A DNA stretch of 64,000 bases from positions 1 to 64,000 of IMG/VR virus record IMGVR_UViG_3300048597_000634. The stretch is one strand, 5' to 3'. The notes beneath the pieces were generated by a model that searched no databases, was not told the origin of the DNA, and saw only the letters and a program-made list of their open reading frames with translations. Positions 16,101 to 35,299 of the stretch are shown one piece after another. Every line of letters begins with the position of its first letter. Within the stretch, counting starts at the first letter, position 1. Made by a program: the position numbers and the translations under genes.

Positions 16101-19100
16101 ATGAACTGTACAACCCGGCGGTCATCCCGTTGCAGGTCGAATAGGAACATAGATTGTTGCTTAACCGTTCCGTTAGCATAGGATGCCAACCAGAATGCGG
16201 TAGCCATGGCGCCGGCTTGGTCAGGGTTAACACCAGCTTCAGATAGAATGTCAACCAGGTGGGCGGTCTTCTGCTCACGGAAGTAGCGGGCTTTAGACTC
16301 CGCCTCTAGGTTATGGTCGGTACCATTACCATCTACTTTATCGATGTGGATTAACGGAGCATGCCATACTGGGGCGAACTTCGCTTCCATTACAGCGCTT
16401 AGCAAACCCCAAAGTTCCCAACCTAAGTCGTTAACGGCACCTAATACATACTCATAGATATCTGCACAGGCAGTGACTGCGTAGTATGACTGAGGACCGA
16501 CGAAGGGTTTGAACATCTCAGGGATTTCCAACCCAGCTGCCTCGAATACACCGCCTTTAACCATACCGTTGAGGATATCAACGATGGCCTCGGTCAAGCG
16601 ATATACCTTGTAGCTGACACCAACCTGCTGGCTTTGTAGAATTAGAGAGCGCCAGTTGGTGGTGTTATAGGTAGTAGCAAGGACTAGGTGTTTACCTACA
16701 ACTACGCCGCTATCATATTTAACTGTTAGAAGACCAGCTCGGAAGAAGATATTAGCCTTCTTAGACAGGCTGGGGGCGCGCAAATGGTCACCCAAGTAAA
16801 CTTCTTTGATGGCCTGGGCACCAGGACCACCGGCACACATATCACAGCTATCCCATGCCTTGTCTTCGGTAGACACTAGACCACGCAAGCCAGCTACTTC
16901 AGTAACCAGGAACGTAGCACTAACGCCGTCACCGTCAGAGTCACCTTTGGTGATGTCAGTCATAGCAATGACCGAGACCCCGATGGTATAAGGATAGGGG
17001 TTAGCCATCACATCCTTCTTGGTCAATGGGTTATACACCCAAGGACGGTCGAAACAGTAGAAGGTATTGGCGTAGGCTTCTTGAGACTTAGGCATACGAA
17101 GTACCCGAAGCACAGGACCGTCTTTGATTGGACTACGGGTCAAGTGGTTAAACGCTTCACAACGTTCGGGTAGATCCCATACTGATTCACCATGGGCTTT
17201 ATAGTCAGCCCAGGTAGGTACGGCACGGAGGTCTAGTCCGTAGTGCTTAGCCACGCGGCGGGCATTAGCCCATTGGTCATCACCTTCATGGAGCAACATC
17301 ACTCCAGTGGGTAGGTTAGGCATGGCGATTACTTTACCGCCGAAGACCTCACCACCGGAAATAAACTTACGGACACCCTCAGAGGATGCCCAAGACTCCA
17401 TACGACCACACAACTGGTTGGCAATGATTCCGATGCTGCGACCGTCTAAGGAACCCGACAGGACTTCAGCTAAATACGCCTGGAACAAACCGCTAGCAGT
17501 GCTATGACTATTGTCTTCAGCACTACGACCATTGAGGTAATACAGGAACGGAGTCCAGACCTCGATGGATTTACTGACGGTGTAGACTTCACCGCTATCG
17601 GGGTCTACTTTGTATTCTTTGCGGGAAGCATCGATTTGAAAGATGTAGTCTTTGAGGGCATCACATAGCCCACCGAAGTTGGATACATTGCTGACATCAG
17701 CATTACCCAAGACGGCTTTAAGCGTATCGATAATCTCAGCATTGGGTATCCAGGTTGCGGCGCCGGCGCCCTTCTTACCTTCTTCCCATTTGCCTAATTT
17801 GACAACAGTACGGTCATCAATAGCTTTACTGAGCCCAGAGTAAGCACTCAGATGCAGCATTTTAGCCCGCCACATAGAGTTAGTTTTACCGGATAGACGT
17901 TGGTGACTAATTAGGTCTTTAGCCAACTCATCATTACCAATACCCCACGCATCGGTCATAGCCCGGAGGGAACGCATACAGACGTCCATCTGCCCGGAGC
18001 TGTTATTGTTGATGCCCTGACGAGTAGTAGCCGCTTCATAGAGGACTACATCGTAGATGGGGCAGTTCTTACGACCAACCAACATGGTGGACTGCTGAGC
18101 TACTTTAGCGACGCGCCCGGCTTTATTGATGAACAACACGAATGCATTGTCCTTGTCATTGGTGAAGCACTTGTAAGTGTAGTCTTCAGTAACACCGGCA
18201 GCCAGGGACATTACCAAGGCACGAGCTTCCTTAGCGTCGTCAATTAGACGCCATGAGTCGATACCACGGTCAGACATGTCAGTATAGAGACGGTCAATGG
18301 CGTAGCCGAAGTCACCGTGCTCTAGCTCTTCCCACATCGTCCAAACGTTTTCACGCTTGAAGTAGTTGAAGAAGGCAGTTTGAAGCTGCGTGTACAAGGG
18401 TTGAGCAACCATAGATACATGGTCTTCCACCAAATACTCCAGGTGGCGACGACCTTCTACTAATTCGTTGATGTCTTTAGCCATCTCAACCATGGCTAGG
18501 AACCCTGGCTCTTTACAGTCAGGGTTTAGTACCAAGGTGGCGCCGATGACGCTGATTAGACAGCCATCAACGTCAATCTTCATGGCGTCTTGCAAATACA
18601 CCGCGTCAACTGTTTTGCCTGCAGCATTAGGGAGCTTCAGGAATGTAGATTTGACGGGCATTAGGTTAGCCTTAGCCACAGAAGAACGAATCTTGGCTTG
18701 ACGTTCCATGGGTGTGACTTTGAATTCCACCTCCAAGTTCTTGCCAGTAATCTCAGGTGCTACGTGGACACGAACCCATTCCAAGATACCGTCGCCGTTA
18801 TTACCTTCATAGGCGAAGGGTTTACTGGGGGCTAGCTCATCATCGGTATGGACGTTACATACCACAGAACCACCATTGCCGTGGACATACACAGCGGTTT
18901 GAGGGTAGAAGTAGTAGTATTCGATACCACGTACCCGGTGAACCTCGGTCACTAACTCAACATCAGCCAATACACACTCAGGCTGACGGAAGTCCACTGC
19001 CAACTCAGGGCGAACTAAGTGGATATCATCAGCACCGAAACCGACGCCGGGTTGTACTTCGATAGCCCGTTGGGGAATCTCGAAGTTAGCCTGCTCGATG

Positions 19101-22100
19101 TTGGACCCAAAGCCATGGGGCATTTGGTTAGGACCACCAACCCAGGCTACGACACCAGCAGGACCAACGGCGGTCATACCGAGGGCAACACGGATGGCGG
19201 TACCGACGATGGGCTCGGGCTGGGTACTGAACTTATGGCCGGCTTTCACGGCGTAGAAGTTCTCGGGAAGCATCCCAGACCACATTGTATCGATGGGCTT
19301 AACACCACGACCGCTGGTTAAAGCTTTAGCCAACTCAGGTTTGTCTTGACAATTGATATAGCTACCTGATTGGACAGAGTTAGGGGCGCGTAGTAATTGA
19401 CGCTTGGTACCCTTGGCAACCTTACCGTTACTGTTTACGACACAGCTAGTTAGAAAAGCGTCCAAGGATTTGAACTTCGAGTCTGTTAGGAACGCATTAA
19501 CCTTGTCTTGACCGCCCATATCTAGGACGAATTGAGCTTTGACCAACTTATAGACAGCGGGGGCTACTTCTGCCAAGACTTTACAGTTGATAGCAAAGTT
19601 AGGCATTGAATACCCAACGTTCTTGTTGAACGACCAGGTAATACCCAGACGAGACATAGCCTCAGGCAAGAACGTGTCAGCAAACTCAGCGGTGGTCAGT
19701 TTAGCCTGCTTATAATTGGCAGCGTAGGACTTAATTAACTTGTCAGCGTATATACCCCAACAGTTAATCAACGCGTATTTGCCGGTATCACCAACCTTAA
19801 CCACCGGGCTGGGCATGGGGTTGCTGGTATCTAAACCCATAGGAGCCCAGCTATTGGACTCAGCCAAGCGGAAGTTAGCATTCTCTGCCAAGATATTGTC
19901 CGAAGACATGGGGAACATCACCCCAGCATCCTTGTTGAGATACTGGTTGAGGTTGGCTCCCACGGTGGACCAGTCATCTGACGCAGGTAGATGAGCCATT
20001 ACAGGCAATACCACCATGTATAGGTACCGCATGAAGCTACCCATAGAGGACATAGCTTCGGCACTACGGTAAATCTTAGCGGTGTTACCCCGTTCATCGG
20101 TCACCTCATCGTACATAGCTAGCACGACGTTCTTGAACATACGACCCCGGGGCAGGTCAATCATCGTATTGAGTTCAGGAACCCAGGCGAATTCTTTACC
20201 CAGGAAACTGAACACATAACCGTTACCATCCGCCTTGAAGTAGCAGAGGTCATCCTGATGGTTAGTAGCTTCATAGCTACGGAGAATGGCAATCACGTTC
20301 ATAACGTGTTCGGGTTGCCAATCAAAGCCGTGGAAACTGAGGTTAGGATTACAATCAACCTCTGACTTGTTCCCTGTTACGTCTTTGAGGTAGCGGATAA
20401 CGGAGAAGGCGCCTGATACACCATTGGTGCGGGCTTGGACACCCTCAGCATTGAAGCCTGTGGTGAGGTCAAGATTAGCCCAGCTACGAATGTGCTCCTG
20501 ACAGTAGCCAGAGATATCTTTGATGTCAGCCAACTCACGGTTAATCCACATGTTAGACATATGGGTGAGATAGTTAGCCAACTGACCGGCATAACCTTCC
20601 ATATTAGGGGCTGGGGTGGTCACCAAGGGGCGCTCAGGTAGGGCGGTGGTAGTGGGGGCTACTTTTACTTGAGGCGCGGGGGCAGGCTCAGCAGTTACTA
20701 CAACAGGTTCAGTAACGACTACTTGAGGGGCCGCTGAGACTTCGGTAACCGTTTCAGTCGCCACATTAACCACAGGGGCTGCTGCCGCAGATACTTTAGC
20801 CACGGACTGGATAGCATCCAACAGGGTAGCAATCACAGGAGATTGTGTTACTACAGCGGGGGCAGGAGCTACTTCCTTAACTTTCAACCGCGGTCCTTCA
20901 ATCACAGGCTTAGCCGGGGGCAATACCATCTGGCGACCGCCCTGCATCATCACATAAGCCTCATCCGCCCAGTCCATCAGACTACAGATGCGTACCCGTT
21001 GAGGGTCGTCTAAGCCATTACCGGCACGACCCAATTTAAACCGACGGGTAGGTTCATGAACTTCTAAATCAGCAATGTCACCGTAGAAACCACGGGCTAA
21101 CCCTTCGCTGATGCTGGGGTGCCAGGGGCCCAAGACCTTCTCAGTGTAGATATCACTGAGTTGAGGTAAATGGAATACCTCGATAGTTTGGGCAGTCATG
21201 CGTTCATAAGCGAACTCACGACCACGTTCGTACAAGTCAACTTTGGCAGTAGAGCCTTCGACGATAGCTTGACCATCAACTGCCTTAACGGTGAACATCT
21301 GGTCAAACCCTTTGCCCTCCTTGGAGGAGCCAGTGATAGAGGTCACATCAGCTACCACTACAATCCAGTTGCGACCGGGTTGTAGTTTGGCACCCAGACC
21401 CCCTTTGACGGCACAACCACCGGCTTTAACTTCACCGTCAGCCATGATGGCATTCCAGACATCAAGTCGGGCATCGATGATAGCCCGTTGTAGGGTGATG
21501 TTGTCCTCACCTTCGGCGGCTTTGGCTAGGTTAGCCACAGTCATCTGACCGTCTAGCATCACCGACACCTCAGGGGAGATTTCTGGGTATTTCTTCCGTA
21601 GGGTGTTGGGGCGGTTATACACATGGCTTAGCCACATACCACAAGGAGTGGGCAGTCCTTTGTTAAGCGCCGCGCTGGTGCGGAACTTAAGGACAGGTTG
21701 GTCTTTGCTGACCTTCAACAACGAGCTCTCATTGAGGGTTGTGTCTTCACAGACCATAGGCTCACCAAGACGAGGCCATTGCTTCTTACCAAAGTGGCTC
21801 TGGATGGGCAAATTGATATTGCCTTTGAATACTTGACGACCAGAGTCGTCTACATATACACAGCAAAGGCTCACGTAATACCCTAGTGAACGGTCACTAG
21901 ACGCGTGATCAGCCTTGATGGTTGCGGTATGGACAGCGGTCGGCATCAGGGTACCGACCTGTTTTGTTAGTTGGGATAGAGTGTCCATTGTTTCTCCTTG
22001 GTGTGTAGCTTCTAATAGTCCGCTTTTTAGATTGCGGTCGGTAGAAGCGCCATAGTTTAACGACATTTGGAGGTCGCCGGCGCCGTATTGTGCTTTAGCA

Positions 22101-22729
22101 TTAGCTACGATAGCTTTAGCGGCAGCCACAAACGGTTGACCTTTTGCGATCTGAACGATACCACGAACCACGCGTCGCACTATCAAATCCAAAACAGCAC
22201 TTAAGGTAAATGCAGCTCGGTTGGCTACTCGGCGGGCAGCTTTGGCTGCTTTACGGGCTACAGCGTAAACAACAGAACTGTGGCGAGCCTCCATTGAAAT
22301 AATGGTGTGGGCAACAGGAGTGTTGTTAAAGCTGATACGCATACCAGCACGGACAGGGGCGGCAGTCTTAAACAAACGGGCTTGGTCAATCAACTTCTGA
22401 CTGTCCCCGTTAGGGTTGCCTTTCTGATTAAGGCTGATAGTGTAGTTAAGGACAGAGGAGTTTAGGTTTAGTCCAGACAGATTAATGGTGAGTTTGTTAG
22501 TGTTCATAGTTTTTACCTGACTAATGTTTACGGAAGCCGGCTGTTGACTGGAGCCCGTCGAGAGCTGAGCCATAGGCGCTCCACCCTCAACGGACTCATC
22601 TAGACCGGGGTTTTGATGGGACCCCGCCTGGAACCCGTCGGGACTAATTTGAGTCCTCCCGACCGGACTGCCCGCGACTATTTGTAAGGCGCCATCGCTG
22701 GGCGCCATACCGGCAATTGATTTAGTCAT
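13169..22729 (-). CDS. Giant protein (3186 aa): putative single-chain two-barrel DNA-dependent RNA polymerase fused to a C-terminal Pif1/RecD-like SF1B helicase
   Basis: RNAP-like motifs in order: AKIRSSVAKANLMP...LPNAAGKTVDAVY (18671-18694 and following; beta-like), FGGKVIAMPNLP, HLTRSP (TRSP at 17129-17140), TKGDSDGDG (GDSDGD at 16928-16945). Helicase motifs: GEAGTGKT (14540-14563), TATTGRAA, LDEVSML, GDGDQL, NVRQAED, ATTGHSVQGMT, VACSR. Confidence 0.75.
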   Translation of the reverse strand: MTKSIAGMAPSDGALQIVAGSPVGRTQISPDGFQAGSHQNPGLDESVEGGAPMAQLSTGSSQQPASVNISQVKTMNTNKLTINLSGLNLNSSVLNYTISLNQKGNPNGDSQKLIDQARLFKTAAPVRAGMRISFNNTPVAHTIISMEARHSSVVYAVARKAAKAARRVANRAAFTLSAVLDLIVRRVVRGIVQIAKGQPFVAAAKAIVANAKAQYGAGDLQMSLNYGASTDRNLKSGLLEATHQGETMDTLSQLTKQVGTLMPTAVHTATIKADHASSDRSLGYYVSLCCVYVDDSGRQVFKGNINLPIQSHFGKKQWPRLGEPMVCEDTTLNESSLLKVSKDQPVLKFRTSAALNKGLPTPCGMWLSHVYNRPNTLRKKYPEISPEVSVMLDGQMTVANLAKAAEGEDNITLQRAIIDARLDVWNAIMADGEVKAGGCAVKGGLGAKLQPGRNWIVVVADVTSITGSSKEGKGFDQMFTVKAVDGQAIVEGSTAKVDLYERGREFAYERMTAQTIEVFHLPQLSDIYTEKVLGPWHPSISEGLARGFYGDIADLEVHEPTRRFKLGRAGNGLDDPQRVRICSLMDWADEAYVMMQGGRQMVLPPAKPVIEGPRLKVKEVAPAPAVVTQSPVIATLLDAIQSVAKVSAAAAPVVNVATETVTEVSAAPQVVVTEPVVVTAEPAPAPQVKVAPTTTALPERPLVTTPAPNMEGYAGQLANYLTHMSNMWINRELADIKDISGYCQEHIRSWANLDLTTGFNAEGVQARTNGVSGAFSVIRYLKDVTGNKSEVDCNPNLSFHGFDWQPEHVMNVIAILRSYEATNHQDDLCYFKADGNGYVFSFLGKEFAWVPELNTMIDLPRGRMFKNVVLAMYDEVTDERGNTAKIYRSAEAMSSMGSFMRYLYMVVLPVMAHLPASDDWSTVGANLNQYLNKDAGVMFPMSSDNILAENANFRLAESNSWAPMGLDTSNPMPSPVVKVGDTGKYALINCWGIYADKLIKSYAANYKQAKLTTAEFADTFLPEAMSRLGITWSFNKNVGYSMPNFAINCKVLAEVAPAVYKLVKAQFVLDMGGQDKVNAFLTDSKFKSLDAFLTSCVVNSNGKVAKGTKRQLLRAPNSVQSGSYINCQDKPELAKALTSGRGVKPIDTMWSGMLPENFYAVKAGHKFSTQPEPIVGTAIRVALGMTAVGPAGVVAWVGGPNQMPHGFGSNIEQANFEIPQRAIEVQPGVGFGADDIHLVRPELAVDFRQPECVLADVELVTEVHRVRGIEYYYFYPQTAVYVHGNGGSVVCNVHTDDELAPSKPFAYEGNNGDGILEWVRVHVAPEITGKNLEVEFKVTPMERQAKIRSSVAKANLMPVKSTFLKLPNAAGKTVDAVYLQDAMKIDVDGCLISVIGATLVLNPDCKEPGFLAMVEMAKDINELVEGRRHLEYLVEDHVSMVAQPLYTQLQTAFFNYFKRENVWTMWEELEHGDFGYAIDRLYTDMSDRGIDSWRLIDDAKEARALVMSLAAGVTEDYTYKCFTNDKDNAFVLFINKAGRVAKVAQQSTMLVGRKNCPIYDVVLYEAATTRQGINNNSSGQMDVCMRSLRAMTDAWGIGNDELAKDLISHQRLSGKTNSMWRAKMLHLSAYSGLSKAIDDRTVVKLGKWEEGKKGAGAATWIPNAEIIDTLKAVLGNADVSNVSNFGGLCDALKDYIFQIDASRKEYKVDPDSGEVYTVSKSIEVWTPFLYYLNGRSAEDNSHSTASGLFQAYLAEVLSGSLDGRSIGIIANQLCGRMESWASSEGVRKFISGGEVFGGKVIAMPNLPTGVMLLHEGDDQWANARRVAKHYGLDLRAVPTWADYKAHGESVWDLPERCEAFNHLTRSPIKDGPVLRVLRMPKSQEAYANTFYCFDRPWVYNPLTKKDVMANPYPYTIGVSVIAMTDITKGDSDGDGVSATFLVTEVAGLRGLVSTEDKAWDSCDMCAGGPGAQAIKEVYLGDHLRAPSLSKKANIFFRAGLLTVKYDSGVVVGKHLVLATTYNTTNWRSLILQSQQVGVSYKVYRLTEAIVDILNGMVKGGVFEAAGLEIPEMFKPFVGPQSYYAVTACADIYEYVLGAVNDLGWELWGLLSAVMEAKFAPVWHAPLIHIDKVDGNGTDHNLEAESKARYFREQKTAHLVDILSEAGVNPDQAGAMATAFWLASYANGTVKQQSMFLFDLQRDDRRVVQFIVAAAMLVTEAGRAKWHGFNHGPLNSTNVASEEKVRNHKAMTRVTLDYLVKGVSTHEVWANAVSESHCLQLLMDMADPEVLGDLVVGPAPNTALTYTIGADLVAHYESQLTARVGDVDLVELKQTVVDVEVSPTNYMVIDSDDFDLVDPFENIYDDYQPEEYMDITPPSAEEIAMSQAMMAQMMVSEAPAPTVVIDEDEQSTDDMVEAQQAFAVLMSPPPVVVAEAPTQVMAAPTPAVITPVVAPTEDKIFLAKQATVEAEIVSLETRLAKAQALLAKQQEQAKALQKLEDKKAKLSAKLADVVAKLTPEFAAMLGDVTGNEPNEDESDDGEGNVPVTKDDSPKKPDPAPAAAHTITFTPAENALRQSLAETASQPAAAPVTPQVAPSADEDMFIPEEGDYQANMAMFATKVAADPTTNKKATISNKVDEVAAVNTPAPAPAPAPAPTQTQSADDVVANLIKGYAKKSEPKNLIDAKKKARSIPCPPVDDTGATDCQKRFFNAACTGDNIFLSGEAGTGKTYALETMINHWLGLGDKVIVTATTGRAAMNMGVRFDIENLDGYGTFNSVLGLGIGFDEKDAAAMTPYAWSQRMIARGQANDELSVMLHGEKEGQRVHFVLDEVSMLDSRMLWVIWNILYYHNPCIQVILAGDGDQLKVIGKGARDFWQRAVIEGCNGTLENIIENFRCVNLKTNVRQAEDPELAAALRHLSETNEITGVLLERFRLCAEEGLKPSDNLNTTHIRFNNVTVERINRRMTRAMGTETKVYRAEIHGNNGPVSINGDRYPGWVYAFSPIAPVMEFAVGMPVKLRKNRKKDGVLEASNGSRGFITKLCKKSVWVLFEDGKELNIGVERFEGAGKDGQSPGAFYQLPIHPDFATTGHSVQGMTITNEGVISVSQEWKAKDKNRQFIFEEDGEHKTYKVALNDAQWLLVACSRFTKASDIYFNFEGPEDLHWFYQAQGNKDLSYRKWLESKAE
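14762..14796 (+). repeat. (GGGGGC)n hexamer repeat, six G5 tracts; encodes the PAPAPA linker on the - strand
   Basis: Read directly: GGGGG at 14762, 14768, 14774, 14780, 14786, 14792. Confidence 0.9.
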
Positions 22730-22958: not shown

Positions 22959-23022
22959 ACGAAATTAGACGCCCTATAGACGCCGTTAAGGTTAATGACT
23001 ACCGGTGAACATAGTCAGTAAA

Positions 23023-23051
23023 AACCCCCTTCTAACGATTAGAAGGGGGTT
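23023..23051 (-). terminator. Intrinsic terminator
   Basis: Perfect 13-bp stem AACCCCCTTCTAA-CGA-TTAGAAGGGGGTT with a T-run on the - strand. Confidence 0.75.
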
Positions 23052-23059
23052 AAGGTGAT

Positions 23060-23295
23060 CGGTTGCGTAATTTTCAATAATGACAAAACCTATACTGAGA
23101 GGGCGTTTTAGGTCTTAAGCGCAACTATTACGTCCGAACACCTAAGAAAAGCGGCTTCCTCGGAGGCTTAAAAGTGTACGCTTGCGTAGACGCCAATATC
23201 TCTAAAGTATATAGCTGGCTTCGGTTACAGCTCCAAGCTTAGTTGGTTAGAAGCGTACACTAGAGGCTCGTCGATGATATATAGTCGGCTGTCTC
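23060..23295. ncRNA. Candidate structured non-coding RNA between two terminators
   Basis: No ORF. 11-bp inverted repeat AGTGTACGCTT (23173-23183)/AAGCGTACACT (23251-23261), C(UUCG)G-capped hairpin, further hairpins, and a promoter-like motif at 23286-23301. Confidence 0.4.
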
Positions 23296-23304
23296 TCTCA
23301 TAAA

Positions 23305-23340
23305 AGTGACCCCAGTTTCCTTTTGGATTCTGGGGTCACT
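23305..23340 (-). terminator. Intrinsic terminator after the HExxH gene
   Basis: AGTGACCCCAG / CTGGGGTCACT 11-bp inverted repeat. Confidence 0.75.
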
Positions 23341-23347
23341 AGCTTAT

Positions 23348-23806
23348 TTAGAACGGGGGTGGGTTCCCGCAAAGGCTCGCCAAGAAGTCTTTAAACCCCT
23401 TGTTAACTTCATAGTTATCCCCCCAGTCGACCGCCCACTGGGCTAGACAATCAACTATCATTTCCTCTTCCAGTGCCCACTTATCGTAGGCGTGGAAGCG
23501 GACTTTGAAATCCACCTCCCGGAAATACCGACGCACAAAGGCGTTACCCTTGTAAGTCAGCTTACCCGTATGGCACAGGTGGTGACCCAGTTCATGGATC
23601 ATTGTCCGAAAGCCCCGCCCGGTGCCATACCGAGCGTGGTTGATGAAGATTAAGTGCTCGCCCGGGAAATACATCCCGTTCCACTCCTCAAGGGAGCAGT
23701 GGAACCGGGCTCTCGCCCAGTCGCCTGAGTCTGGCGTTATCCACCGGATACTGAGGTTGAAATTGTTTTGTAGATACTGAGACCACTCGTAACAACGATT
23801 AGCCAT
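23348..23806 (-). CDS. Zincin-like metallopeptidase (ImmA/IrrE/SprT-like)
   Basis: TMIHELGHHLCH (HExxH) and a downstream EEMIVDCLA third-ligand-like motif. Confidence 0.7.
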   Translation of the reverse strand: MANRCYEWSQYLQNNFNLSIRWITPDSGDWARARFHCSLEEWNGMYFPGEHLIFINHARYGTGRGFRTMIHELGHHLCHTGKLTYKGNAFVRRYFREVDFKVRFHAYDKWALEEEMIVDCLAQWAVDWGDNYEVNKGFKDFLASLCGNPPPF

Positions 23807-24050
23807 ATTTAACTCCTGCCGAGTGTATCGGTTGTTTGGACGTTAAAAATATGGCCGGGTAGGGCTATCGAGGTGCGGTTGTCTGGGTGCGGCTGTGGTG
23901 GTCTGACAGTGTTGAATACTGTCCTGAGGAAACCGAATTACACGCGAGACACGCCTACACTGGTAGGATCTGGCACTTAAGCACTATGTCTGCGGATAAT
24001 CGGCTGTTATCCTCATAAAAGAGGGGGTAACCTCTATAAGTTACCCTCTT

Positions 24051-24341
24051 TTAGTGCCAGATTTTCTTACTGGCTTTTATGGCAGTACGGGCACATTTCT
24101 CCCATTTCTCTACCATATTGATCCATTCTTTAGAAGGGTTATCCTTCATGGTCATGCGGACCAGCTGCTCAGTCACTTCTAAGGCGTGGATAGCCTCGTC
24201 GAGTACCGCAGCGCGTACTTCGACGTCTTCACAGTCCAGGTCTACCCTGGGCAAAGACGCAGGTGTTACCCCAAAGTCTTTGGCAAAGGCTAGAGCCCTT
24301 ACTGTTTTGATAACGAAGTCTTTATAGTGAGACTTGTTCAC
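24051..24341 (-). CDS. Hypothetical protein (96 aa)
   Basis: ORF track; AGGAG SD before a GTG start. Confidence 0.65.
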   Translation of the reverse strand: MNKSHYKDFVIKTVRALAFAKDFGVTPASLPRVDLDCEDVEVRAAVLDEAIHALEVTEQLVRMTMKDNPSKEWINMVEKWEKCARTAIKASKKIWH

Positions 24342-24422
24342 TGTTTATCTCCTACCGGATTTACCGGCTGTAGGGTCGATAAAAGAGAGGGGGAGAACTC
24401 TTTCGAGAACTCCCCCAAGTCT

Positions 24423-24947
24423 TTACACTACAGCTTGACCGAAGAGATTTTTGATTTCTTCTTCAGTAGCATTAGCAAGCATATCAACGTCAAGCAACTG
24501 GTTTGTTAGCCCAGCTACTAGTTGAGAGCCTAGCTCCTTGTTTTGTTGAGTTACTGCATCGAGGGCTTCGATTTTTGCTTTCGCTTCATCTACTGCCACT
24601 TGTGCCCGTTCTTTGCTAGCTTTAACTTCTACCGCCAATGTCCTCATACGTAGACCAACCGCTTTCGCTGCGTTGACTACATTTTTGGCATCTTGAGCTT
24701 CTTTTTCAGCTTTCTCAACAGACTCTTCTACGCTTTTTATTTTTGCTTCAGACTCCACTTTCGCTTCATCATTGGCTAATTCAAAGGTCGTTAATTTCTC
24801 CACTAAGGGTTGATTAACAGAGTCATCCAAGTTGTAGCTCTTAAGTAGGTTATTAGCCCGCTCCTCTGCAGTAGGTTCCTTATCTTCGACCTTACGACCA
24901 AAAATGTTACCAAACAAAGCAGCTACGTTATTGTTAGTGTTAGACAT
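24423..24947 (-). CDS. Coiled-coil protein, paralogue A (174 aa)
   Basis: Shares MSN.NNNVAALFGN.F.RK and AKNVVNAAKAVGLRMRTLA with 25106-25669. Confidence 0.8.
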   Translation of the reverse strand: MSNTNNNVAALFGNIFGRKVEDKEPTAEERANNLLKSYNLDDSVNQPLVEKLTTFELANDEAKVESEAKIKSVEESVEKAEKEAQDAKNVVNAAKAVGLRMRTLAVEVKASKERAQVAVDEAKAKIEALDAVTQQNKELGSQLVAGLTNQLLDVDMLANATEEEIKNLFGQAVV

Positions 24948-25105
24948 ACTTTTGCCTAGGTTTTACCTAGGGCGAATTTTATGACCATCAACAGCACGAC
25001 ATAGGCGAGGGGAGTCGCACCCCTGCTTATTACCGTCATGCACCCAGCGGCTGTCTCAGTCATAAAAAGACGGGACCTTTTTAGGGGTCCCGAGTCTTTC
25101 AATTG

Positions 25106-25669
25106 TTAGACGATTTTCACGTCAGCTGCCTTTTCAGGCACCTTTACACCAGAAGAAGAACCAAAGAGGGCATTTATCTCCTCTTCAGTGGCGTTAGCCA
25201 GCATATCTAAACTCAATAGAGGGTTGGTTAGACCATCTAAGAGTTGATTACCTAGCTCTTTATTCTGCTTAGTGTTTACTTCCAAAGTTTCGATTTTCGC
25301 TTTCGCTTCTTCTACCGCTTTTTCAGCTTTTTCCTTTGCAGCTTTTGCTTCTATGGCAAGAGTACGCATACGTAGACCAACCGCTTTCGCTGCGTTGACT
25401 ACGTTTTTGGCCTCTAATTCTTTGTCTTCTGCATCTTTGATTGCTTTTTGGGCTTTCTCAATGGTCTGCTTAGAATCAGCTTTCGCGTCATCGACAGACT
25501 GTTCAAAAGTTGCAAGTTTTTGAACAACAGGAGCACTCACAACAGGGTCAAGTTTATAGGACTCAACCAACTTTGCTGCCCGCTCTTCAGGTGTTTCCAC
25601 TTTCTCAACAGTTTTGCGACTGAAGAGATTACCAAATAGAGCAGCTACGTTGTTGTTAATATTAGACAC
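25106..25669 (-). CDS. Coiled-coil protein, paralogue B (187 aa)
   Basis: Tandem paralogue of 24423-24947; GTG start. Confidence 0.8.
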   Translation of the reverse strand: MSNINNNVAALFGNLFSRKTVEKVETPEERAAKLVESYKLDPVVSAPVVQKLATFEQSVDDAKADSKQTIEKAQKAIKDAEDKELEAKNVVNAAKAVGLRMRTLAIEAKAAKEKAEKAVEEAKAKIETLEVNTKQNKELGNQLLDGLTNPLLSLDMLANATEEEINALFGSSSGVKVPEKAADVKIV

Positions 25670-25843
25670 GATGTTAGCCCAAGTTTTACTTGGGACGAAG
25701 TTAATGACCGCAACAACAACTAATAGGCAGGCGTAGGGAGTCGCACCCCATCCTTACCAGCCGTCTTGCACTCTGCTACCAGCGGCTGTTTTGGTCATTA
25801 AATAACCCCCATAGTTTCCTACAGGGGTTGGGTACGTAGAGAT

Positions 25844-26137
25844 TTAGAGCTTATACAGCTCCTTCTCTACGTGATAGGGGAGCGGTCCCCCAAGGAGATT
25901 ATCAAAGGCTTCCCCAGCATTACGCCAAGAATCCGCCACCCGTTCCTCCTCGTCCGACATGCACTCGAAAGCGCATTTGAGGTTCTGTACGGACTCTCCA
26001 GTCAGAAGGCTCAGTACCTCCCAATCAGAGAGCTCACCCGAGCTCCAACGGTGGCCTATATCTAACGGCATATCGCCGTTTTTAACAGCGAATGCGTTAA
26101 CTAGACCAACGTTCATTTGCAAGTTAATGTCATTCAT
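25844..26137 (-). CDS. Hypothetical protein (97 aa from MNDINLQ)
   Basis: Start reassigned to ATG 26137, which has AGGGG upstream. The ORF-track start lies inside a terminator. Confidence 0.6.
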   Translation of the reverse strand: MNDINLQMNVGLVNAFAVKNGDMPLDIGHRWSSGELSDWEVLSLLTGESVQNLKCAFECMSDEEERVADSWRNAGEAFDNLLGGPLPYHVEKELYKL

Positions 26138-26218
26138 GTTTTCCCCTGGCGGATGTACCGCCGGTAAATTACATGAAGAAAAAACCCCCATAGGGGGGGC
26201 TATGGGGGAGTATTTGCT

Positions 26219-26737
26219 CTATATAGATAAAGAGAAGTTGAATACCTTCCCTTTTGAATCGTGCATCTGACCAACCATGTTATAAGCACGGTCTATTAGG
26301 TCTTCTTGTACGTCAGGGTCTAACGTGGAGAAGGATTTAGGTCCATCTACCCAAGTTATTAGGATTACAGCACTTTTTGTAATACCTAGTTGTTTATAAC
26401 AATTACCCAAGCGAGCTAATTTCTCTTCTTTTTGGGATACTTTAGGTGCGTTTAAAGTAACATCAAAAGAATAGAGCTCTCCTTGACCTTGAGGGTCTGT
26501 AAGAGAATCAACAGCGAAGCACTCATCTAACAAGAATGAAGGTTGCACCACATTCCAGTTAATACTCCGCCCTTTTTCCTCAAACCGCCAAGCTATATGC
26601 TTTAGCGTACCTGGACGTTCTGCTTTAGCCAAATCCAACAAAGTGTCACGGCTAAAGATACTGCGTTTGTCGCTAAAGCCTGCAGCGGCTAATATTTCGT
26701 TCCACATGTTTTCTGCTTGTTTTGAAGCTCTAGACAT
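26219..26737 (-). CDS. Hypothetical protein (172 aa)
   Basis: ORF track; AAGGAG SD. Confidence 0.7.
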   Translation of the reverse strand: MSRASKQAENMWNEILAAAGFSDKRSIFSRDTLLDLAKAERPGTLKHIAWRFEEKGRSINWNVVQPSFLLDECFAVDSLTDPQGQGELYSFDVTLNAPKVSQKEEKLARLGNCYKQLGITKSAVILITWVDGPKSFSTLDPDVQEDLIDRAYNMVGQMHDSKGKVFNFSLSI

Positions 26738-26928
26738 TTGGGGTACTCCTTTGACCGCCGAAGTACAGATATCGGCTGTTTGGTCGTTAAAAAGAGGCCC
26801 AAATGGGTTTTGTTATTATTACTCTTTTTATATACCGGTAGTTAGCCCACCCCTCCTATAAACGCGATAATCCCATCCAGGTTTGATAATCTCGTTTATA
26901 AAGAGGTAGGCTAGGGTCAGTTATTTAC

Positions 26929-27150
26929 TTACCAACGACGGCCCTTTCCTACTGAAGGAAAGGCGTCCTGGGCGTCTTTGCCCGTGGGGAGGTTGTCAGC
27001 CTCACGCACAAACTCGTTGTATAGCCATTGGGTGGCCACTTCAGGGGTGGCGCTAATGGTGATGGCTAGGCGAGAGATGCGAACGCTAATAATCTGCATA
27101 ATCAAGACCGCCCATGTAGAGCGGTTAGATAGGTCACTAAAAACCCCCAC
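26929..27150 (-). CDS. Small hypothetical protein (start uncertain, perhaps MQIISV)
   Basis: ORF track. Confidence 0.4.
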   Translation of the reverse strand: MGVFSDLSNRSTWAVLIMQIISVRISRLAITISATPEVATQWLYNEFVREADNLPTGKDAQDAFPSVGKGRRW

Positions 27151-27177
27151 GGCGCAGCCATGGGGGCGTTTTACTAA

Positions 27178-27669
27178 TTAGGGGAAGAAGTGCTTAGTAA
27201 GCACATCACGTAGCTTACTAGCTGCTTCTTCATCACCTTCAGGGTGCACAAGCACCTGTAGGGATTTAAAGGATATCCCTACTTTGTGCCCGCACACCCC
27301 GAAGGTGTACCTATGGGAGCCGTGGTCAACCACATCCACAGCCCCCATAGGTAGACTGTCTATTGCCTCCCTAGGTGAGGCTTTGACTTGCCCCATCTTC
27401 CCTAGGTACCGCCACCGGATGATGGCAGTGGGTGCTACGGACACCCAGGTCTTGTCCCCACAGGTGGTTAGCCCATAGGTGTACCCACTAGGTACTGTCT
27501 CCCCTGTAACGAGGAACCCAGCGGGGTGTGGAGGTGCTTTAACGTCCACCTCAAGGACGAACATATGAGGTCCGTAGTCCTCATATGCGAACCCTTCCAC
27601 CTGTGCCCACACCATAGGGCGTGTGGCTGGGTTGAAGGATTCATCCCATTGGCGTGTAAACACCAACAT
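27178..27669 (-). CDS. Hypothetical protein (163 aa)
   Basis: ORF track; AGGAGG SD 8 nt upstream. Confidence 0.7.
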   Translation of the reverse strand: MLVFTRQWDESFNPATRPMVWAQVEGFAYEDYGPHMFVLEVDVKAPPHPAGFLVTGETVPSGYTYGLTTCGDKTWVSVAPTAIIRWRYLGKMGQVKASPREAIDSLPMGAVDVVDHGSHRYTFGVCGHKVGISFKSLQVLVHPEGDEEAASKLRDVLTKHFFP

Positions 27670-27717
27670 ACTTCATGCCTCCTACCGCACGTAGCGGCTA
27701 TATAGGTCATGAAATAA

Positions 27718-27752
27718 CCCCCTCTATACACCAGGGGAGGCATATAGAGGGG
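27718..27752 (-). terminator. Terminator hairpin with 14-nt loop
   Basis: CCCCTCTATA-caccaggggaggca-TATAGAGGGG; loop identical to that at 28241-28284. Confidence 0.7.
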
Positions 27753-27760
27753 ATTATGTT

Positions 27761-28195
27761 TTATTTGGTGATAAGTACCTCAAAGGCACGACCGTAGCCG
27801 TGCCCTACCACACACCGCCCGAGGTTGGCAGGTGTGTCTTTTACGGCTCGACCCAGCCGTTGGTGCCCCCAGGCCCTGAGGTAGTAGGTGGGAGTGAGTC
27901 TACTACATAGGTGCCTATTTCCCTCATACGAGAAGTCGTAAAGGTCATAGGCCCCCTCCTCCCTACAAGTCAGCCTGCCAAAGGCCCACTCATAAGGAGT
28001 ACCGTATGTGGACACCAGCCCTGGCTGGGCACAGTGGGTGTCTAGGAACTTAGGTAGTTCCAAGGTCATAGACTCCCCACTACCTGCCAAGTAGTGGGTG
28101 AACAGTCTAAGGGTTAGTCTATTTCCTTCACTGCTGAGGACGGCACCACTAGCAAGGATAATAAGACTAACTAAGGCAATGATTACTTTCTTCAT
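27761..28195 (-). CDS. Hypothetical protein with N-terminal signal/TM segment (from MKKVIIALVSL)
   Basis: Start reassigned; ATG 28234 is an alternative. The ORF-track MPPLVYRGG start is terminator sequence. Confidence 0.6.
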   Translation of the reverse strand: MKKVIIALVSLIILASGAVLSSEGNRLTLRLFTHYLAGSGESMTLELPKFLDTHCAQPGLVSTYGTPYEWAFGRLTCREEGAYDLYDFSYEGNRHLCSRLTPTYYLRAWGHQRLGRAVKDTPANLGRCVVGHGYGRAFEVLITK

Positions 28196-28240
28196 AACGT
28201 TAGCCCCTAGGTGTCTAAGGGCGGTATAGTTCATGAAGAA

Positions 28241-28284
28241 AAAACCTCCCCTATACACCAGGGGAGGCATATAGGGGAGGTTTT
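28241..28284 (-). terminator. Terminator hairpin with 14-nt loop
   Basis: AAAACCTCCCCTATA-caccaggggaggca-TATAGGGGAGGTTTT. Confidence 0.75.
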
Positions 28285-28293
28285 TATTAAGGG

Positions 28294-28449
28294 TTAGTCA
28301 CGGGGCATGATTGCCCCCGCTGCCACGATGGCAGTGGCGGCACCGGCGCCGACACCTACCATCTGTGCTGCCACGAGGGCGGACTTAGCCCCTCCGGTCA
28401 GACCGGAGAGGAGGATAAAACCGATAGCAATCTGTGTAATAACTTTCAT
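28294..28449 (-). CDS. Small hydrophobic Gly/Ala-rich peptide (51 aa)
   Basis: Hand-translated MKVITQIAIGFILLSGLTGGAKSALVAAQMVGVGAGAATAIVAAGAIMPRD; lies between a motif copy and a terminator. Confidence 0.6.
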   Translation of the reverse strand: MKVITQIAIGFILLSGLTGGAKSALVAAQMVGVGAGAATAIVAAGAIMPRD

Positions 28450-28651
28450 GATTCATACCGCTCGTAGCGGCTATATAGATCATGAAATAACCTCCCAAGT
28501 TATTCACAAGGGAGGTCTTAAGTAACTGGCTTTAGCCGCCCTAGGCACCAGGAATTTCTCATGTGTGCGTAGGGGGCTATAGGCACTTATACATATACCA
28601 GTCCATTTTCTGCCGCGCATATTTTTGGCTGAGCTTTAGTTATCAACTTTC

Positions 28652-28731
28652 TAATTCCCCGTCCATCCGCTGTTAATTCCCCGTCCATCCGCTGTTAATT
28701 CCCCGTCCATCCGCTGTTAATTCCCCGTCCA
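28652..28731. repeat. 22-bp tandem direct repeat, 3.6 copies (iteron-like)
   Basis: TAATTCCCCGTCCATCCGCTGT at 28652, 28674 and 28696, partial at 28718; degenerate ATTCCCCGTC near 28786 and 28841. Confidence 0.95.
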
Positions 28732-34634: not shown

Positions 34635-35299
34635 GCTTTCTTAAACCGTAATAGCACGTTAATGTCTACCTCCATCCTAGGGGTGATATAACGAGGTGGG
34701 TCTAAGTGCTGTAACCACATTAAATTACCATCCAACTCGTGGGTCATAAACCAAGGATTAGTCCTAGTGTCGTACCCCGCTGCCAACTTAACAGAGTCAG
34801 TAACCTTATACATTACGTCTGTATATAACCCAATAGACCTGTAAGCAACGGGGGCTAGCGCTGCCCTAATATCATCATGCTTGAGTTGACCAGTTACTAA
34901 GACCAACCAATGGTCGCCGGGCTCATCGTAATCTTCGTCTACTAACTCAGTGGTGCCAGGCACCAATGGTACCCGCTCATACCTATCGTCTTCTGTTTTA
35001 GTTACCACATAGCCGCGAGCTTTAATATACCCAAAGCACTCTTGCTGTCGCTTAGTCCAAGGCAGCACAGGTTCTGACCAGATGTCTAACGGCCATGGAC
35101 TGGTATGTCCAATACCCCAAGCAAGGCTATTGGGTTTAGCCATAAGATCTAATACTTCCTGTAATTCCCAAGTCTGGTCTAACCAGTCATTGAGAAAAGA
35201 AGAGCGGCTGGGCCGACCAGCGCGGGGCAGCCATGGCTCTTCTAACAAATCTTGGTTATGTAACAGCTGGGCATTGGGGATAGGAATGATGTTAGTCAT
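34631..35299 (-). CDS. Hypothetical protein (222 aa) in the tail operon
   Basis: ORF track; ATGA overlap with the next gene. Confidence 0.65.
   Translation of the reverse strand: MTNIIPIPNAQLLHNQDLLEEPWLPRAGRPSRSSFLNDWLDQTWELQEVLDLMAKPNSLAWGIGHTSPWPLDIWSEPVLPWTKRQQECFGYIKARGYVVTKTEDDRYERVPLVPGTTELVDEDYDEPGDHWLVLVTGQLKHDDIRAALAPVAYRSIGLYTDVMYKVTDSVKLAAGYDTRTNPWFMTHELDGNLMWLQHLDPPRYITPRMEVDINVLLRFKKA

What the first reader, a model, noticed from the sequence alone, without database searches (positions are those of the whole stretch)
23286..28483. Repeated bipartite motif ATGA-N5-AYAGCCG: candidate phage-specific promoter
Seen: six exact - strand copies (23286, 24001, 25048, 25783, 27695, 28468), each directly after a terminator U-tract. 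The N5 spacer varies (gagag, ggata, ctgag, ccaaa, cctat, tctat) while the flanks are fixed. Variants with an N4 spacer or 1-2 mismatches occur at 4450, 7982, 23829, 24365, 26161, 26773 and 28221. Under uniform base composition about 0.06 exact hits are expected in 128 kb of both strands; this is only a guide, because the motif was defined post hoc. It does not resemble TTGACA/TATAAT. Inference: a promoter for one of the giant RNAPs or for the phage sigma.
Basis: partly seen in the sequence, partly recalled or inferred. Interest (0 to 1): 0.75.

Follow-up and report, generated by a model that had tools for sequence, protein, structure and literature searches.

The report
Repeated terminator-promoter cassette in cyanophage
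A 5.6-kb row of small genes in an uncultured 205-kb cyanophage has the same short signal in front of every gene, directly after a terminator. It is most likely a phage-specific start signal plus a protective RNA hairpin, next to a giant gene that looks like the phage's own RNA polymerase.

Summary
There are six exact copies of ATGA-N5-AYAGCCG, all on the - strand, where 0.02 are expected.

They are the best-matching members of 13 composite units (window 28515-23003). Each unit has these parts in order:
- a GC hairpin, weak or absent in two units (E, K);
- a T-tract;
- n-W-T-G, then N4, then A-n-A-Y-A-R-C-C-G-S-T-A;
- a small hairpin whose 5' arm starts at (G)CCG, clear in most units but weak in J and L;
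- an SD and a start codon; units J and L are followed by no ORF.

The composite is found only in this array. The same composite, with the same spacing, heads 11-12 units in a close relative and 10 in a phage at 73% capsid identity. In that more distant phage the array genes are unrelated. In every case it lies just upstream of the homologue of the 3186-aa gene.

That giant protein has an invariant GDxDGD motif and a fold that matches RNA polymerase beta' (Z about 9), plus a C-terminal helicase.

Cassette order differs between strains, and the junctions fall in the composite, as with T4 PeSL cassettes.

My best reading (0.45) is a non-sigma70 terminator/promoter/leader cassette of an early-gene array. 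No transcript data exist, so the start site and the enzyme that reads it are inferred. An RNA-level processing or operator element is the main rival.

The parts
22959..28515 (-). Array of 13 tandem units (A to M), each a composite signal followed by a small gene or a non-coding stretch. It ends at the 78-aa ORF and the 3186-aa gene.
28458..28515 (-). Unit A. Hairpin 28515-28491, T-tract 28490-28484, motif 28483-28468 (exact copy), inner hairpin 28470-28458. Followed by a 51-aa membrane peptide gene, start 28449.
28202..28279 (-). Unit B. Hairpin 28279-28246, variant motif 28234-28219 (ATGA-N5-ACCGCCC), leader hairpin. Gene start 28195.
27685..27752 (-). Unit C. Hairpin 27752-27719, motif 27710-27695 (exact copy), inner hairpin 27697-27685. 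Gene start 27669.
27107..27167 (-). Hairpin 27167-27143, variant motif 27137-27122 (GTGA...CTAACCG), inner hairpin 27125-27107. 56-aa ORF, start 27099.
26757..26811 (-). Unit E. Weak hairpin, T-tract, variant motif 26788-26773 (AACG-N4-ACAGCCG), inner hairpin 26776-26757. Gene start 26737.
26148..26208 (-). Unit F. Hairpin 26208-26185, variant motif about 26174-26159 (ATGT-N5-ACCGGCG), inner hairpin 26162-26148. Gene start 26137.
25758..25828 (-). Unit G. Hairpin 25828-25805, motif 25798-25783 (exact copy), stem CAGCCG/CGGCTG to 25758. A 113-nt leader runs to the GTG at 25669.
25030..25092 (-). Unit H. Hairpin 25092-25071, motif 25063-25048 (exact copy). A 100-nt leader runs to the ATG at 24947. 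The gene is a paralogue of unit G's gene.
24355..24416 (-). Unit I. Hairpin 24416-24391, variant motif 24380-24365 (ATCG-N4-ACAGCCG), inner hairpin 24367-24355. GTG start 24341.
23846..24049 (-). Unit J. Hairpin 24049-24022, motif 24016-24001 (exact copy). It is followed by about 160 nt with no ORF. The first stem again starts at AGCCG.
23819..23853 (-). Unit K. T-tract without a clear hairpin, variant motif 23844-23829 (AACG-N4-ACAACCG), inner hairpin 23831-23819. Gene start 23806 (HExxH protein).
23024..23339 (-). Unit L. Hairpin 23339-23306, motif 23301-23286 (exact copy). It is followed by about 260 nt with no ORF, ending in the hairpin 23050-23024.
22959..23050 (-). Hairpin 23050-23024, variant motif 23018-23003 (CTGA-N5-TTCACCG). 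It heads the 78-aa ORF (22958-22722) and the overlapping 3186-aa gene.
13169..22729 (-). 3186-aa gene. The central part is RNAP beta'-like, with GDSDGDG at residue 1930. A C-terminal Dda/Pif1-like helicase spans residues 2700-3100.
28652..28731 (.). Perfect 22-bp tandem repeat, 3.6 copies, 170 nt upstream of unit A.
   Evidence: parallel in Ma-LMM01

Best explanation
The motif is the conserved core of a composite terminator/promoter/leader cassette. The cassette is repeated in front of every unit of a phage early-type gene array.

**Proposed mechanism**
1. The GC hairpin plus T-tract ends the transcript of the previous unit.
2. The T-tract and the fixed T-G that follow it, together with A-Y-A-R-CCG-S-T-A, form a compact promoter with no -35 element. 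It is not read by a sigma70-type holoenzyme. It is read by a phage-encoded polymerase. The candidates are the beta'-like 3186-aa protein encoded at the end of the array and the 5341-aa DYDGD protein.
3. Transcription starts at a purine of A-Y-A, one to three bases before CCG. The RNA therefore begins with the small CCG hairpin, a 5'-terminal stem-loop that would protect a short monocistronic mRNA.
4. The SD and start codon follow within 25-50 nt.
5. Because the cassettes are alike, they also act as recombination points that shuffle genes in and out of the array.

**Shown:** the anatomy, confinement to the array, strand bias, conservation across three phages in front of unrelated genes, hairpin covariation, cassette reshuffling, and the beta'-like fold.

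**Inferred:** that it is a promoter, the start site, which enzyme reads it, and early timing.
For: - **Occurrence.** Six exact copies against 0.02 expected. There are 13 units in the window.
- **Position-specific constraint.** Ten orthologous unit pairs were compared with the 95%-capsid relative. They are identical in 9-10 of 10 pairs only at the last stem G, TTT, T-G, Y, CCG and T(+8). Everywhere else 3-6 of 10 are identical.
- **Conservation in front of unrelated genes.** The phage at 73% capsid identity has the same consensus and spacing at 10 sites upstream of its 3186-aa homologue. No array protein there is detectably related.
- **Specificity.** The matrix scores 17 bits or more only in the arrays, on the coding strand.
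- **No sigma70 alternative.** Sigma70-like sites are depleted, 2 against 8.3 expected. With 13 hairpin/T6 signals in series there is no other conserved sequence, and only 25-50 nt of room before most start codons.
- **Inner hairpin.** 100% paired, and the closing pair covaries (GC 6, AU 2, CG 2; 0 of 500 shuffles reach it). The stem starts at (G)CCG whatever the loop length, from 5 to about 60 nt.
- **Geometry.** W-T-G-n at -11..-8, six bases, then Y(-1) A(+1). This equals the AR9 non-virion RNAP promoter A(-11)ACA-6N-U-A/G(+1) (PMC5449584).
- **A phage polymerase candidate.** In the 3186-aa family GDxDGD is invariant in 15 sequences. The AF2 model has pLDDT 75. The 50 best VIA-align entries are all RNAP largest subunits, Z 8.6-9.5. 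BFVD hits include crAss-like giant proteins, LEF-9 and Pithovirus RNAP subunits.
- **Precedent.** P23-45 has giant virion and non-virion two-barrel RNAPs, each with its own motif, and a pre-early block that includes the polymerase gene (PMC10770324).
- **Shuffling.** Intergenic modules are 82-87% identical to the relative while the genes differ or move. A metagenome contig joins gene F to the unit C signal through a hybrid hairpin.
- **Synteny.** In Ma-LMM01 a tandem repeat is followed by a 5.8-kb block of 10 genes that is early by RNA-seq (PMC5780444).
Against: - **No transcript data.** No start site, terminator efficiency or timing has been measured. No RNA run was listed.
- **Outer-stem complementarity.** The part upstream of the proposed start (T-tract end, W-T-G-n, N5) tends to be complementary to the SD/start-codon region of its own unit. 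Cognate duplex energy is -6.1 against -4.6 kcal/mol for non-cognate pairs, permutation p below 5e-5, with one compensatory change between orthologues. This suggests that some RNA includes it, so it may start further upstream or read through.
- **G005.** In the 59%-capsid relative a hairpin begins right after the T-tract. That leaves no room for a promoter downstream of the T-tract.
- **Conserved loop bases.** T(+8) A(+9) in the loop is conserved beyond what a stabilising hairpin needs.
- **Ma-LMM01 timing.** The Ma-LMM01 look-alike (T-tract plus TAGTGR, six copies) heads genes classed as middle, not early.
- **Weak polymerase evidence.** The polymerase assignment has no sequence-level support. 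Z about 9 is only moderately above background. Nothing links either giant protein to this motif except position and co-divergence.
Confidence: 0.45

Rival explanations
1. The motif is an RNA-level element inside a long or read-through early transcript. The hairpin plus U-tract is a 3' protective stem and an RNase E-type cleavage site. The motif and its two-tier hairpin form the 5' end of each processed cistron, or an operator for a phage RNA-binding or translational regulator that presents A-Y-A and U-A-C single-stranded. The array would be driven from a promoter near the 22-bp repeats, perhaps by a polymerase that ignores intrinsic terminators.
For: - The region upstream of the proposed start is complementary to the unit's own SD/start region.
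- In G003 a 7-bp stem (ACCCTAG/CTAGGGT) encloses the core.
- In G005 the hairpin begins right after the T-tract.
- The loop bases T-A are conserved.
- The Ma-LMM01 early operon has back-to-back hairpins between cistrons and a single predicted promoter after its tandem repeat.
- A tandem repeat also precedes unit A here.
Against: - The T-tract is a canonical terminator tail, T in 32-34 of 34 sites at three positions, directly after GC stems. A stability hairpin does not need that.
- Thirteen in series would block any terminator-sensitive polymerase.
- No Rfam family matches.
- The outer stems are short, differ between units and partly follow from the palindrome CATG.
- No candidate RNA-binding protein was identified.
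Confidence: 0.25
2. The motif is a promoter read by bacterial-type RNA polymerase carrying the phage-encoded or a host alternative sigma factor. Candidate -10-like elements are the T-tract/W-T (TTTnAT), T-A-n-A-Y-A, or RCCGATAA, which resembles the sigma-28 -10 box.
For: - A sigma70-family gene (regions 1.2 and 2) lies at window 1-918. It has homologues in G003, G004 and G005, so it belongs to the phage clade.
- Its region 2.4 differs from E. coli at the residues that read position -12 (comparison from memory of the E. coli sigma70 sequence).
- Six of 34 sites read RCCGAT(A/T)A.
- The distance from hexamer to A-Y-A, or to T(+8)A(+9), fits standard spacing.
Against: - No reading gives A at -11 and T at -7 together. 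All 34 sites have T where TTTnAT would need A.
- There is no -35 element. That region is the variable hairpin.
- No TAAA lies 15 nt upstream of GCCG.
- The motif is absent from the other 100 upstream regions of the genome, where a phage sigma would be expected to act.
Confidence: 0.12
3. The motif is a DNA hairpin promoter in the manner of N4 virion RNAP. The CCG hairpin, or the two-tier hairpin with A-Y-A in a bulge, is extruded and recognised as structure. Transcription starts downstream, at or just before the SD.
For: - The stem covaries while the loop (T-A-C) and the flank (A-Y-A-R) are sequence-conserved.
- A purine lies at a fixed 8 nt after T-A-C in ten units.
- A giant polymerase-like protein is present.
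Against: - N4 promoters have a 5-7 bp stem and a 3-nt loop (my recollection, not checked here). Here the stem is 4-5 bp and the loop runs from 5 nt to about 60 nt.
- No N4-type (T7-like) polymerase is present: PF00940 is absent and PHROGs gives no hit.
- A start at the SD would remove the leader.
Confidence: 0.06
4. There is no regulatory role. The similarity is left over from serial duplication of one cassette, or serves only as a recombination site.
For: - Some units are paralogous (G/H, and the terminators of B and C).
- Cassettes do recombine at the composite.
Against: - Hairpin stems, spacers, loops and genes have diverged to background while specific positions stay fixed in 34 sites of three genomes.
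- G003 has no detectable DNA or protein similarity in the array apart from the composite.
Confidence: 0.05

Closest known systems
PeSL cassettes (promoter-early stem-loop) of T4-like phages (PMC2839356, PMC4122927)
   Same: Both are small composite stem-loop/terminator plus promoter sequences repeated at the borders of small ORFan genes in a plastic region. Both are more conserved than the genes they flank. In both, gene order and content differ between close relatives, with junctions in the composite.
   Different: The PeSL promoter part is a near-consensus sigma70 -35/N17/-10. Here there is no -35 or -10. Instead there is a T-tract/T-G/AYARCCGSTA core at fixed spacing, plus a leader hairpin. 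The host is cyanobacterial, and the phage encodes an RNAP-like giant protein.
Short promoters of non-canonical phage two-barrel RNAPs. AR9 nvRNAP: A(-11)ACA-6N-U-A/G(+1) (PMC5449584). P23-45: virion and non-virion RNAP motifs (PMC10770324).
   Same: Both are compact promoters without a -35 element. A 4-nt box at -11..-8 and Y/R at -1/+1 fit if transcription starts at the third base of AYA. The motif is confined to an early block, and that block includes a polymerase gene. The phage polymerases are giant or fused.
   Different: The sequence is different. The start site is unmeasured. The conserved block continues 7-8 nt into the transcript. It is fused to a terminator. The polymerase here is only a structural prediction and carries a helicase.
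Ma-LMM01 (Fukuivirus) early region and its T-tract/TAGTGR composites
   Same: The capsid is distantly related (30%). A tandem repeat is followed by a block of about 6 kb of small genes on one strand. Six hairpin/T-tract/T-A-G-T-G-R composites lie on one strand in 7 kb. A giant protein of MaMV-DC is the best structural match to the beta'-like region.
   Different: The AYARCCG half is absent. The Ma-LMM01 composites head genes classed as middle. Its early operon looks polycistronic.
5'-terminal stem-loops that stabilise bacterial and phage mRNAs (ompA type; established knowledge, not checked here)
   Same: The stem begins within 1-3 nt of the proposed 5' end, is GC-rich, and precedes the SD.
   Different: The loop and flank sequences are conserved, which stabilisation alone does not require.

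Membership tests
sigma70-type promoter | -35 TTGACA-like and -10 TATAAT-like hexamers 16-18 bp apart, with A at -11 and T at -7 | tested here: not met
   The consensus scan finds 2 sites in 22-30 kb against 8.3 expected, only one at a unit. The logo has T, not A, at the -11-like position in 34 of 34 sites. The -35 region is the variable hairpin.
T7-like single-subunit RNAP promoter | The genome encodes a T7-like RNAP | tested here: not met
   PF00940 has no match in the 205-kb genome (the control genomes also lack it). PHROGs gives no RNAP hit for the giant ORFs.
N4 virion-RNAP hairpin promoter | A 5-7 bp stem with a 3-nt loop upstream of the start, with conserved bases (from memory) | tested here: not met
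   The inner hairpin has 4-6 bp and a loop of 5 to about 60 nt. The upstream hairpins vary freely in stem and loop.
AR9/phiKZ-type short promoter of a non-canonical RNAP | A 4-nt box at -11..-8 and Y/R at -1/+1 relative to a mapped start | not testable with these tools
   The geometry fits if the start is the third base of AYA. No 5'-end data exist.
PeSL-type composite terminator/promoter cassette | A stem-loop plus promoter composite repeated at the borders of variable small genes | tested here: met
   13, 12 and 10-11 units in three phages, all at gene borders in one array.
PeSL-type composite terminator/promoter cassette | Linked to gain, loss or reordering of genes between close relatives | tested here: met
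   The unit D orthologue is moved. The unit G leader sits on a different gene in G001. The G003 genes are unrelated. An X1 contig joins gene F to the unit C signal.
PeSL-type composite terminator/promoter cassette | The promoter part is sigma70 early type | tested here: not met
Intrinsic terminator (upstream half of each unit) | A GC-rich stem-loop followed directly by a T-run | tested here: met
   16 terminator-like sites against 8.3 expected in 22-30 kb. Hairpins were found for 11 of 13 units. The T-tract is invariant in all 34 sites. Efficiency is untested.
Two-barrel RNA polymerase (3186-aa protein) | DxDxD metal-binding motif in a beta'-type double-psi beta-barrel | tested here: met
   GDxDGD is invariant in 15 family members. 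In the model, residues 342-835 align to beta'/Rpb1 around the active centre, Z 8.6-9.5, and all 50 top entries are RNAP. Foldseek top hits are AR9 and phiKZ nvRNAP, but weak, E 0.04-0.3.
Two-barrel RNA polymerase (3186-aa protein) | A second, beta-type barrel with conserved lysines, and polymerase activity | not tested
   The N-terminal 1450 residues were not modelled. PDB sequence and profile searches give no RNAP hit.
Two-barrel RNA polymerase (5341-aa protein) | DxDxD motif in a beta'-like fold | tested here: inconclusive
   LGDYDGDS(Y/F)QAA is invariant in 6 homologues. The model is poor, pLDDT 51, and below 50 at the motif. hhalign to the 3186-aa family pairs the two motifs at 2% probability.

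The most novel reading that the evidence does not exclude
The composite is the early promoter of a previously unrecognised family of giant single-chain two-barrel RNA polymerases, beta'-like and fused to a helicase, that are delivered or made early. The family is carried by a whole clade of freshwater jumbo cyanophages. Its relatives reach Ma-LMM01/MaMV-DC, phages currently thought to rely only on host sigma-A. The terminator hairpin/T-tract would be part of the initiation signal, so termination and re-initiation are coupled in one 60-nt module that also drives cassette shuffling.
Probability: 0.25. Interest if true: 0.8.

Novelty: new variant of a known kind. Interest (0 to 1): 0.6.

Why it matters
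If the reading is right, it would define the promoter and leader of an uncharacterised phage transcription system in bloom-relevant cyanophages. It would give a sequence handle for finding early (host-takeover, anti-defence) gene arrays in metagenomic phage genomes. It would also extend the PeSL idea, regulatory cassettes that double as recombination points, beyond T4-like phages and sigma70 promoters. Finally, it questions the published view that Ma-LMM01-type phages use only the host polymerase, because a MaMV-DC giant protein is the best structural match to the beta'-like region.

Tried and rejected
- **Leader peptide or leaderless start at the ATG of ATGA.** Rejected. ATG is replaced by ATC, AAC, TTG, CTG or CCG in real units and orthologues.
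- **Genome-wide promoter class.** Rejected. The motif is confined to one array. K-mer enrichment over 101 other upstream regions gave no second motif.
- **Exact pattern in relatives.** It gave only chance hits inside coding sequence. The relaxed consensus was needed.
- **Rfam.** Nothing credible in 22-30 kb.
- **Non-coding stretches after units J and L.** Folding z-scores were -0.7 and -2.5. The second includes a terminator, so this is not pursued as evidence of an RNA gene.
- **RNA-seq.** No RNA run was listed.
- **Cultured-phage homologues of the 3186-aa core by tblastn.** None found.
- **PDB by sequence or profile.** Only the helicase is found.
- **Structure of the 5341-aa region.** The model is too poor to search. 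The language-model look-alikes are weak tape-measure leads only.
- I dropped the two candidate rows and did not resend them.
- **Sigma-28-like -10 box (GCCGATAA).** Only 6 of 34 sites fit, and there is no TAAA at N15.
- **NtcA and LexA boxes.** I compared them from memory with the site sequences and saw no fit; no scan was run.
- **Integron attC.** Not formally tested.

Full report
**1. Observation**

Shuffles give 0.02 expected. The window is the first 64 kb of a 205,544-bp IMG/VR virus record with 46% GC. The whole genome adds only one more exact match, at 111002, with no T-tract or hairpin in front of it. The heptamer ACAGCCG occurs 11 times in the genome. Ten of these are on the - strand and eight are intergenic, nearly all between 23.2 and 28.5 kb. 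The signal is therefore real but local. It is not a genome-wide promoter class.

**2. Anatomy**

Reading the - strand from 28.5 to 22.9 kb shows 13 tandem units, A to M. Each unit has these parts in order:
- a GC-rich hairpin, weak or absent in E and K;
- a T-tract;
- the motif;
- a small hairpin whose 5' arm begins at (G)CCG (weak or unclear in J and L);
- in most units an AGGAG-type SD and a start codon 25-50 nt after the core.

Units G and H have 100-113-nt leaders. Units J and L are followed by about 160 and 260 nt without an ORF. The last unit, M, heads a 78-aa ORF that overlaps the start of a 3186-aa gene. The sites at 4450 and 7982 do not have the composite structure.

**3. What genome this is**

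The portal, protease and major capsid genes lie at 52.7-58.1 kb. The capsid protein is about 30% identical to those of Microcystis phage Ma-LMM01 and a Microcoleus phage. IMG/VR holds closer relatives:

| Relative | Capsid identity | Contig length |
|---|---|---|
| G001 | 95% | 101 kb |
| G003 | 73% | 217 kb |
| G005 | 59% | 190 kb |

No T7-like RNAP and no beta' Pfam domain is found. A sigma70-family gene with regions 1.2 and 2 is cut by the contig start at 1-918. It has homologues in G003, G004 and G005.

**4. Comparative test**

Both giant ORFs are conserved in G001, G003 and G005. Directly upstream of the 3186-aa homologue, on the same strand, each relative has an array of small genes with hairpin/T-tract units.

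In G001 and G003 the units carry the same core at the same spacing. I aligned 34 curated sites without gaps. The logo reads GGG, T6, n, W, T, G, N4, A, n, A, Y, A, R, C, C, G, S, T, A. 'ATGA' is thus really W-T-G-n, and the conserved block runs on to CCG-S-T-A.

A matrix built from these sites, and so circular for them, scores 17 bits or more only inside the three arrays. One isolated hit each in G001 and G003 is the exception. About eight hits of 10 bits or more are expected per genome by chance, and G004 and G005 have no hit above about 15 bits.

Ten orthologous unit pairs between G000 and G001 are identical in 9-10 of 10 pairs only at the last stem G, TTT, T-G, Y, CCG and T(+8). Everywhere else 3-6 of 10 are identical.

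G000 and G001 share several array proteins at 36-66% identity, with one weaker pair at 23%. No array protein of G003 is detectably related to any in G000 or G001, and BLASTN finds nothing there. The same signal therefore flanks unrelated genes. This argues for selection on the signal itself and against simple inheritance by duplication.

G005 has a diverged version, T6-G-T-G-G-G-C, 8-10 nt, then ACACCCAC, seven times. In it a hairpin starts right after the T-tract.

**5. Hairpins**

Ten units have a 4-bp stem and a 5-nt loop. In these the stem is paired in all cells and the closing pair covaries (GC 6, AU 2, CG 2). No shuffle of 500 reaches the observed covariation, and slid registers fall to 15-48% paired. 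In the other units a stem still starts at (G)CCG, with loops up to about 60 nt.

There is a second, weaker feature. The T-tract end, W-T-G-n and N5 tend to be complementary to the SD/start-codon region of the same unit. Cognate duplex energy is -6.1 against -4.6 kcal/mol for non-cognate pairs, permutation p below 5e-5. One compensatory change separates unit F from its orthologue. I cannot explain this if transcription starts at A-Y-A. It is the main internal evidence for the RNA-level rival.

**6. Cassette behaviour**

Between G000 and G001 the best-conserved patches, at 82-87%, are the intergenic modules. The unit D orthologue has moved relative to unit F. The unit G leader sits in front of a different gene.

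Contigs of two aquatic metagenome runs match the array only in patches that break at unit borders. One contig joins the 3' end of gene F, through a hybrid hairpin, to the unit C signal. That is a different cassette order. This is the behaviour described for PeSL composite terminator/promoter cassettes of T4-like phages (PMC4122927).

**7. The polymerase question**

*The 3186-aa protein.* It has a C-terminal Dda/Pif1-type helicase and GDSDGDG at residue 1930. Its central 900 residues have 19 relatives among 1.8 billion representatives, most of them far over 1,600 aa, two shorter. GDxDGD is invariant in the 15 I aligned. An AF2 model has pLDDT 75 and pTM 0.75.

- Foldseek against the PDB gives weak E-values, but the list is dominated by RNAP beta' chains, led by AR9 and phiKZ non-virion RNAP.
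- VIA-align gives Z 8.6-9.5 for 50 of 50 top entries, all RNAP largest subunits. Model residues 342-835 align to E. coli beta' 343-1352.
- In BFVD the best match is a MaMV-DC giant protein (E 1.4e-11). It is followed by an Acinetobacter jumbo phage protein, crAss-like phage giant proteins, LEF-9 and Pithovirus RNAP subunits.
- Sequence and profile searches of the PDB find no RNAP. This fits the statement that two-barrel RNAP families share little beyond the DxDxD region (PMC10770324).

I take the beta'-like nature as moderately well supported.

*The 5341-aa protein.* It has an invariant LGDYDGDS(Y/F)QAA. Its model was too poor to use, and hhalign pairs the two motif regions at only 2% probability. 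Its polymerase status remains a lead.

**8. Which reading**

If the 13 hairpin/T6 signals terminate whatever polymerase transcribes the array, each unit needs its own promoter. The composite is the only conserved sequence in the 45-60 nt available. Sigma70-type sites are depleted there, and no register of the logo gives A at -11 together with T at -7.

With the start at the third base of A-Y-A:
- the box W-T-G-n lies at -11..-8 and Y/A at -1/+1, the geometry of the AR9 non-virion RNAP promoter;
- the RNA would begin 1-3 nt before a GC stem.

P23-45 is a precedent for giant virion and non-virion two-barrel RNAPs with their own motifs, and for a pre-early block that contains a polymerase gene. 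Ma-LMM01 gives a synteny argument for early timing. There a tandem repeat is followed by a 5.8-kb block of ten genes that is early by RNA-seq. Here a perfect 22-bp x 3.6 repeat lies 170 nt before unit A.

Against this reading:
- Ma-LMM01's own six T-tract/TAGTGR composites head genes classed as middle.
- Its early operon looks polycistronic, with paired hairpins between cistrons.
- G005 leaves no room for a promoter after the T-tract.

My confidences are:

| Reading | Confidence |
|---|---|
| Non-sigma70 terminator/promoter/leader cassette | 0.45 |
| RNA-level processing or operator element | 0.25 |
| Sigma-dependent promoter | 0.12 |
| N4-style DNA hairpin promoter | 0.06 |
| Duplication relic | 0.05 |

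**9. Verdict**

It is a strong promoter candidate, tied by position and co-divergence to a beta'-like giant protein. However, it is local to one array, the phage sigma is an unlikely reader, and no start site has been measured. In kind it is a new variant of known things: phage-specific promoters and PeSL-like cassettes.

Noticed in passing
window 13169-22729 (-): The 3186-aa protein has an invariant GDxDGD motif, a predicted RNAP beta'-like core and a C-terminal Dda/Pif1 helicase. Its family consists mostly of giant proteins, two of the 19 shorter, from uncultured sequences. The best viral structural match is a Microcystis phage MaMV-DC giant protein.
   Followed up: yes
window 35305-51330 (-): The 5341-aa ORF has no Pfam or PHROG hit in my scans. 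LGDYDGDS(Y/F)QAA is invariant in six homologues of 3700-5300 aa. It could be a second RNAP-like giant protein, with weak tape-measure look-alikes, but this is unresolved.
   Followed up: partly
window 28652-28731: A perfect 22-bp tandem repeat, 3.6 copies, lies 170 nt upstream of the first unit. Ma-LMM01 has a 42-bp x 6.7 repeat in the same position before its early operon. G001 has a 21-bp x 2.6 repeat 1.8 kb upstream of its array. These could be regulator-binding or origin-like iterons.
   Followed up: partly
window 1-918 (-); G005 7753-9375; G004 33999-35444: A primary-like sigma70-family gene (regions 1.2 and 2) is cut by the contig start. In G004 and G005 the homologue is matched in two pieces about 730 nt apart. 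That suggests an intervening element such as an intron, an intein or a homing gene.
   Followed up: no
window 2990-4270 (-) and 4456-4470: A TnpB gene (OrfB_IS605, Cas12f-like TNB and HTH domains). About 190 nt upstream of it lie a strong hairpin/T-tract and a perfect 3' half of the motif (ACAGCCGCTA) with a shortened spacer. An insertion sequence may have landed beside or inside a former unit.
   Followed up: partly
L060 (Ma-LMM01 NC_008562) 43756-50882, - strand: Six copies of hairpin/T-tract plus TTTYYTTYTAGTGR, all on one strand within 7 kb, lie before gp063, gp064, gp065 and gp066. The published transcriptome paper reported no phage-specific motif.
   Followed up: partly
window 24423-24947 and 25106-25669 (-); leaders 24948-25047 and 25670-25782: Paralogous coiled-coil proteins (62% identical) have long leaders that share a conserved block (GGGGTGCGACTCCC...). 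In G001 the same leader precedes a different protein.
   Followed up: partly
window 23846-24000 and 23051-23285 (-): Two units are followed by 160 and 260 nt without an ORF, bounded by T-tracts. These are possible small RNAs. The first is 82% conserved in G001. There is no Rfam match.
   Followed up: partly
window 23348-23806 (-): A 152-aa array protein has an HExxH motif and a weak PHROG metalloprotease hit. It is a possible host-takeover or anti-defence function.
   Followed up: no
whole genome, 7-30 nt before start codons (for example 7773, 9275, 58188): ATTAACC recurs just upstream of ten start codons. It may be a non-SD translation-initiation context.
   Followed up: no
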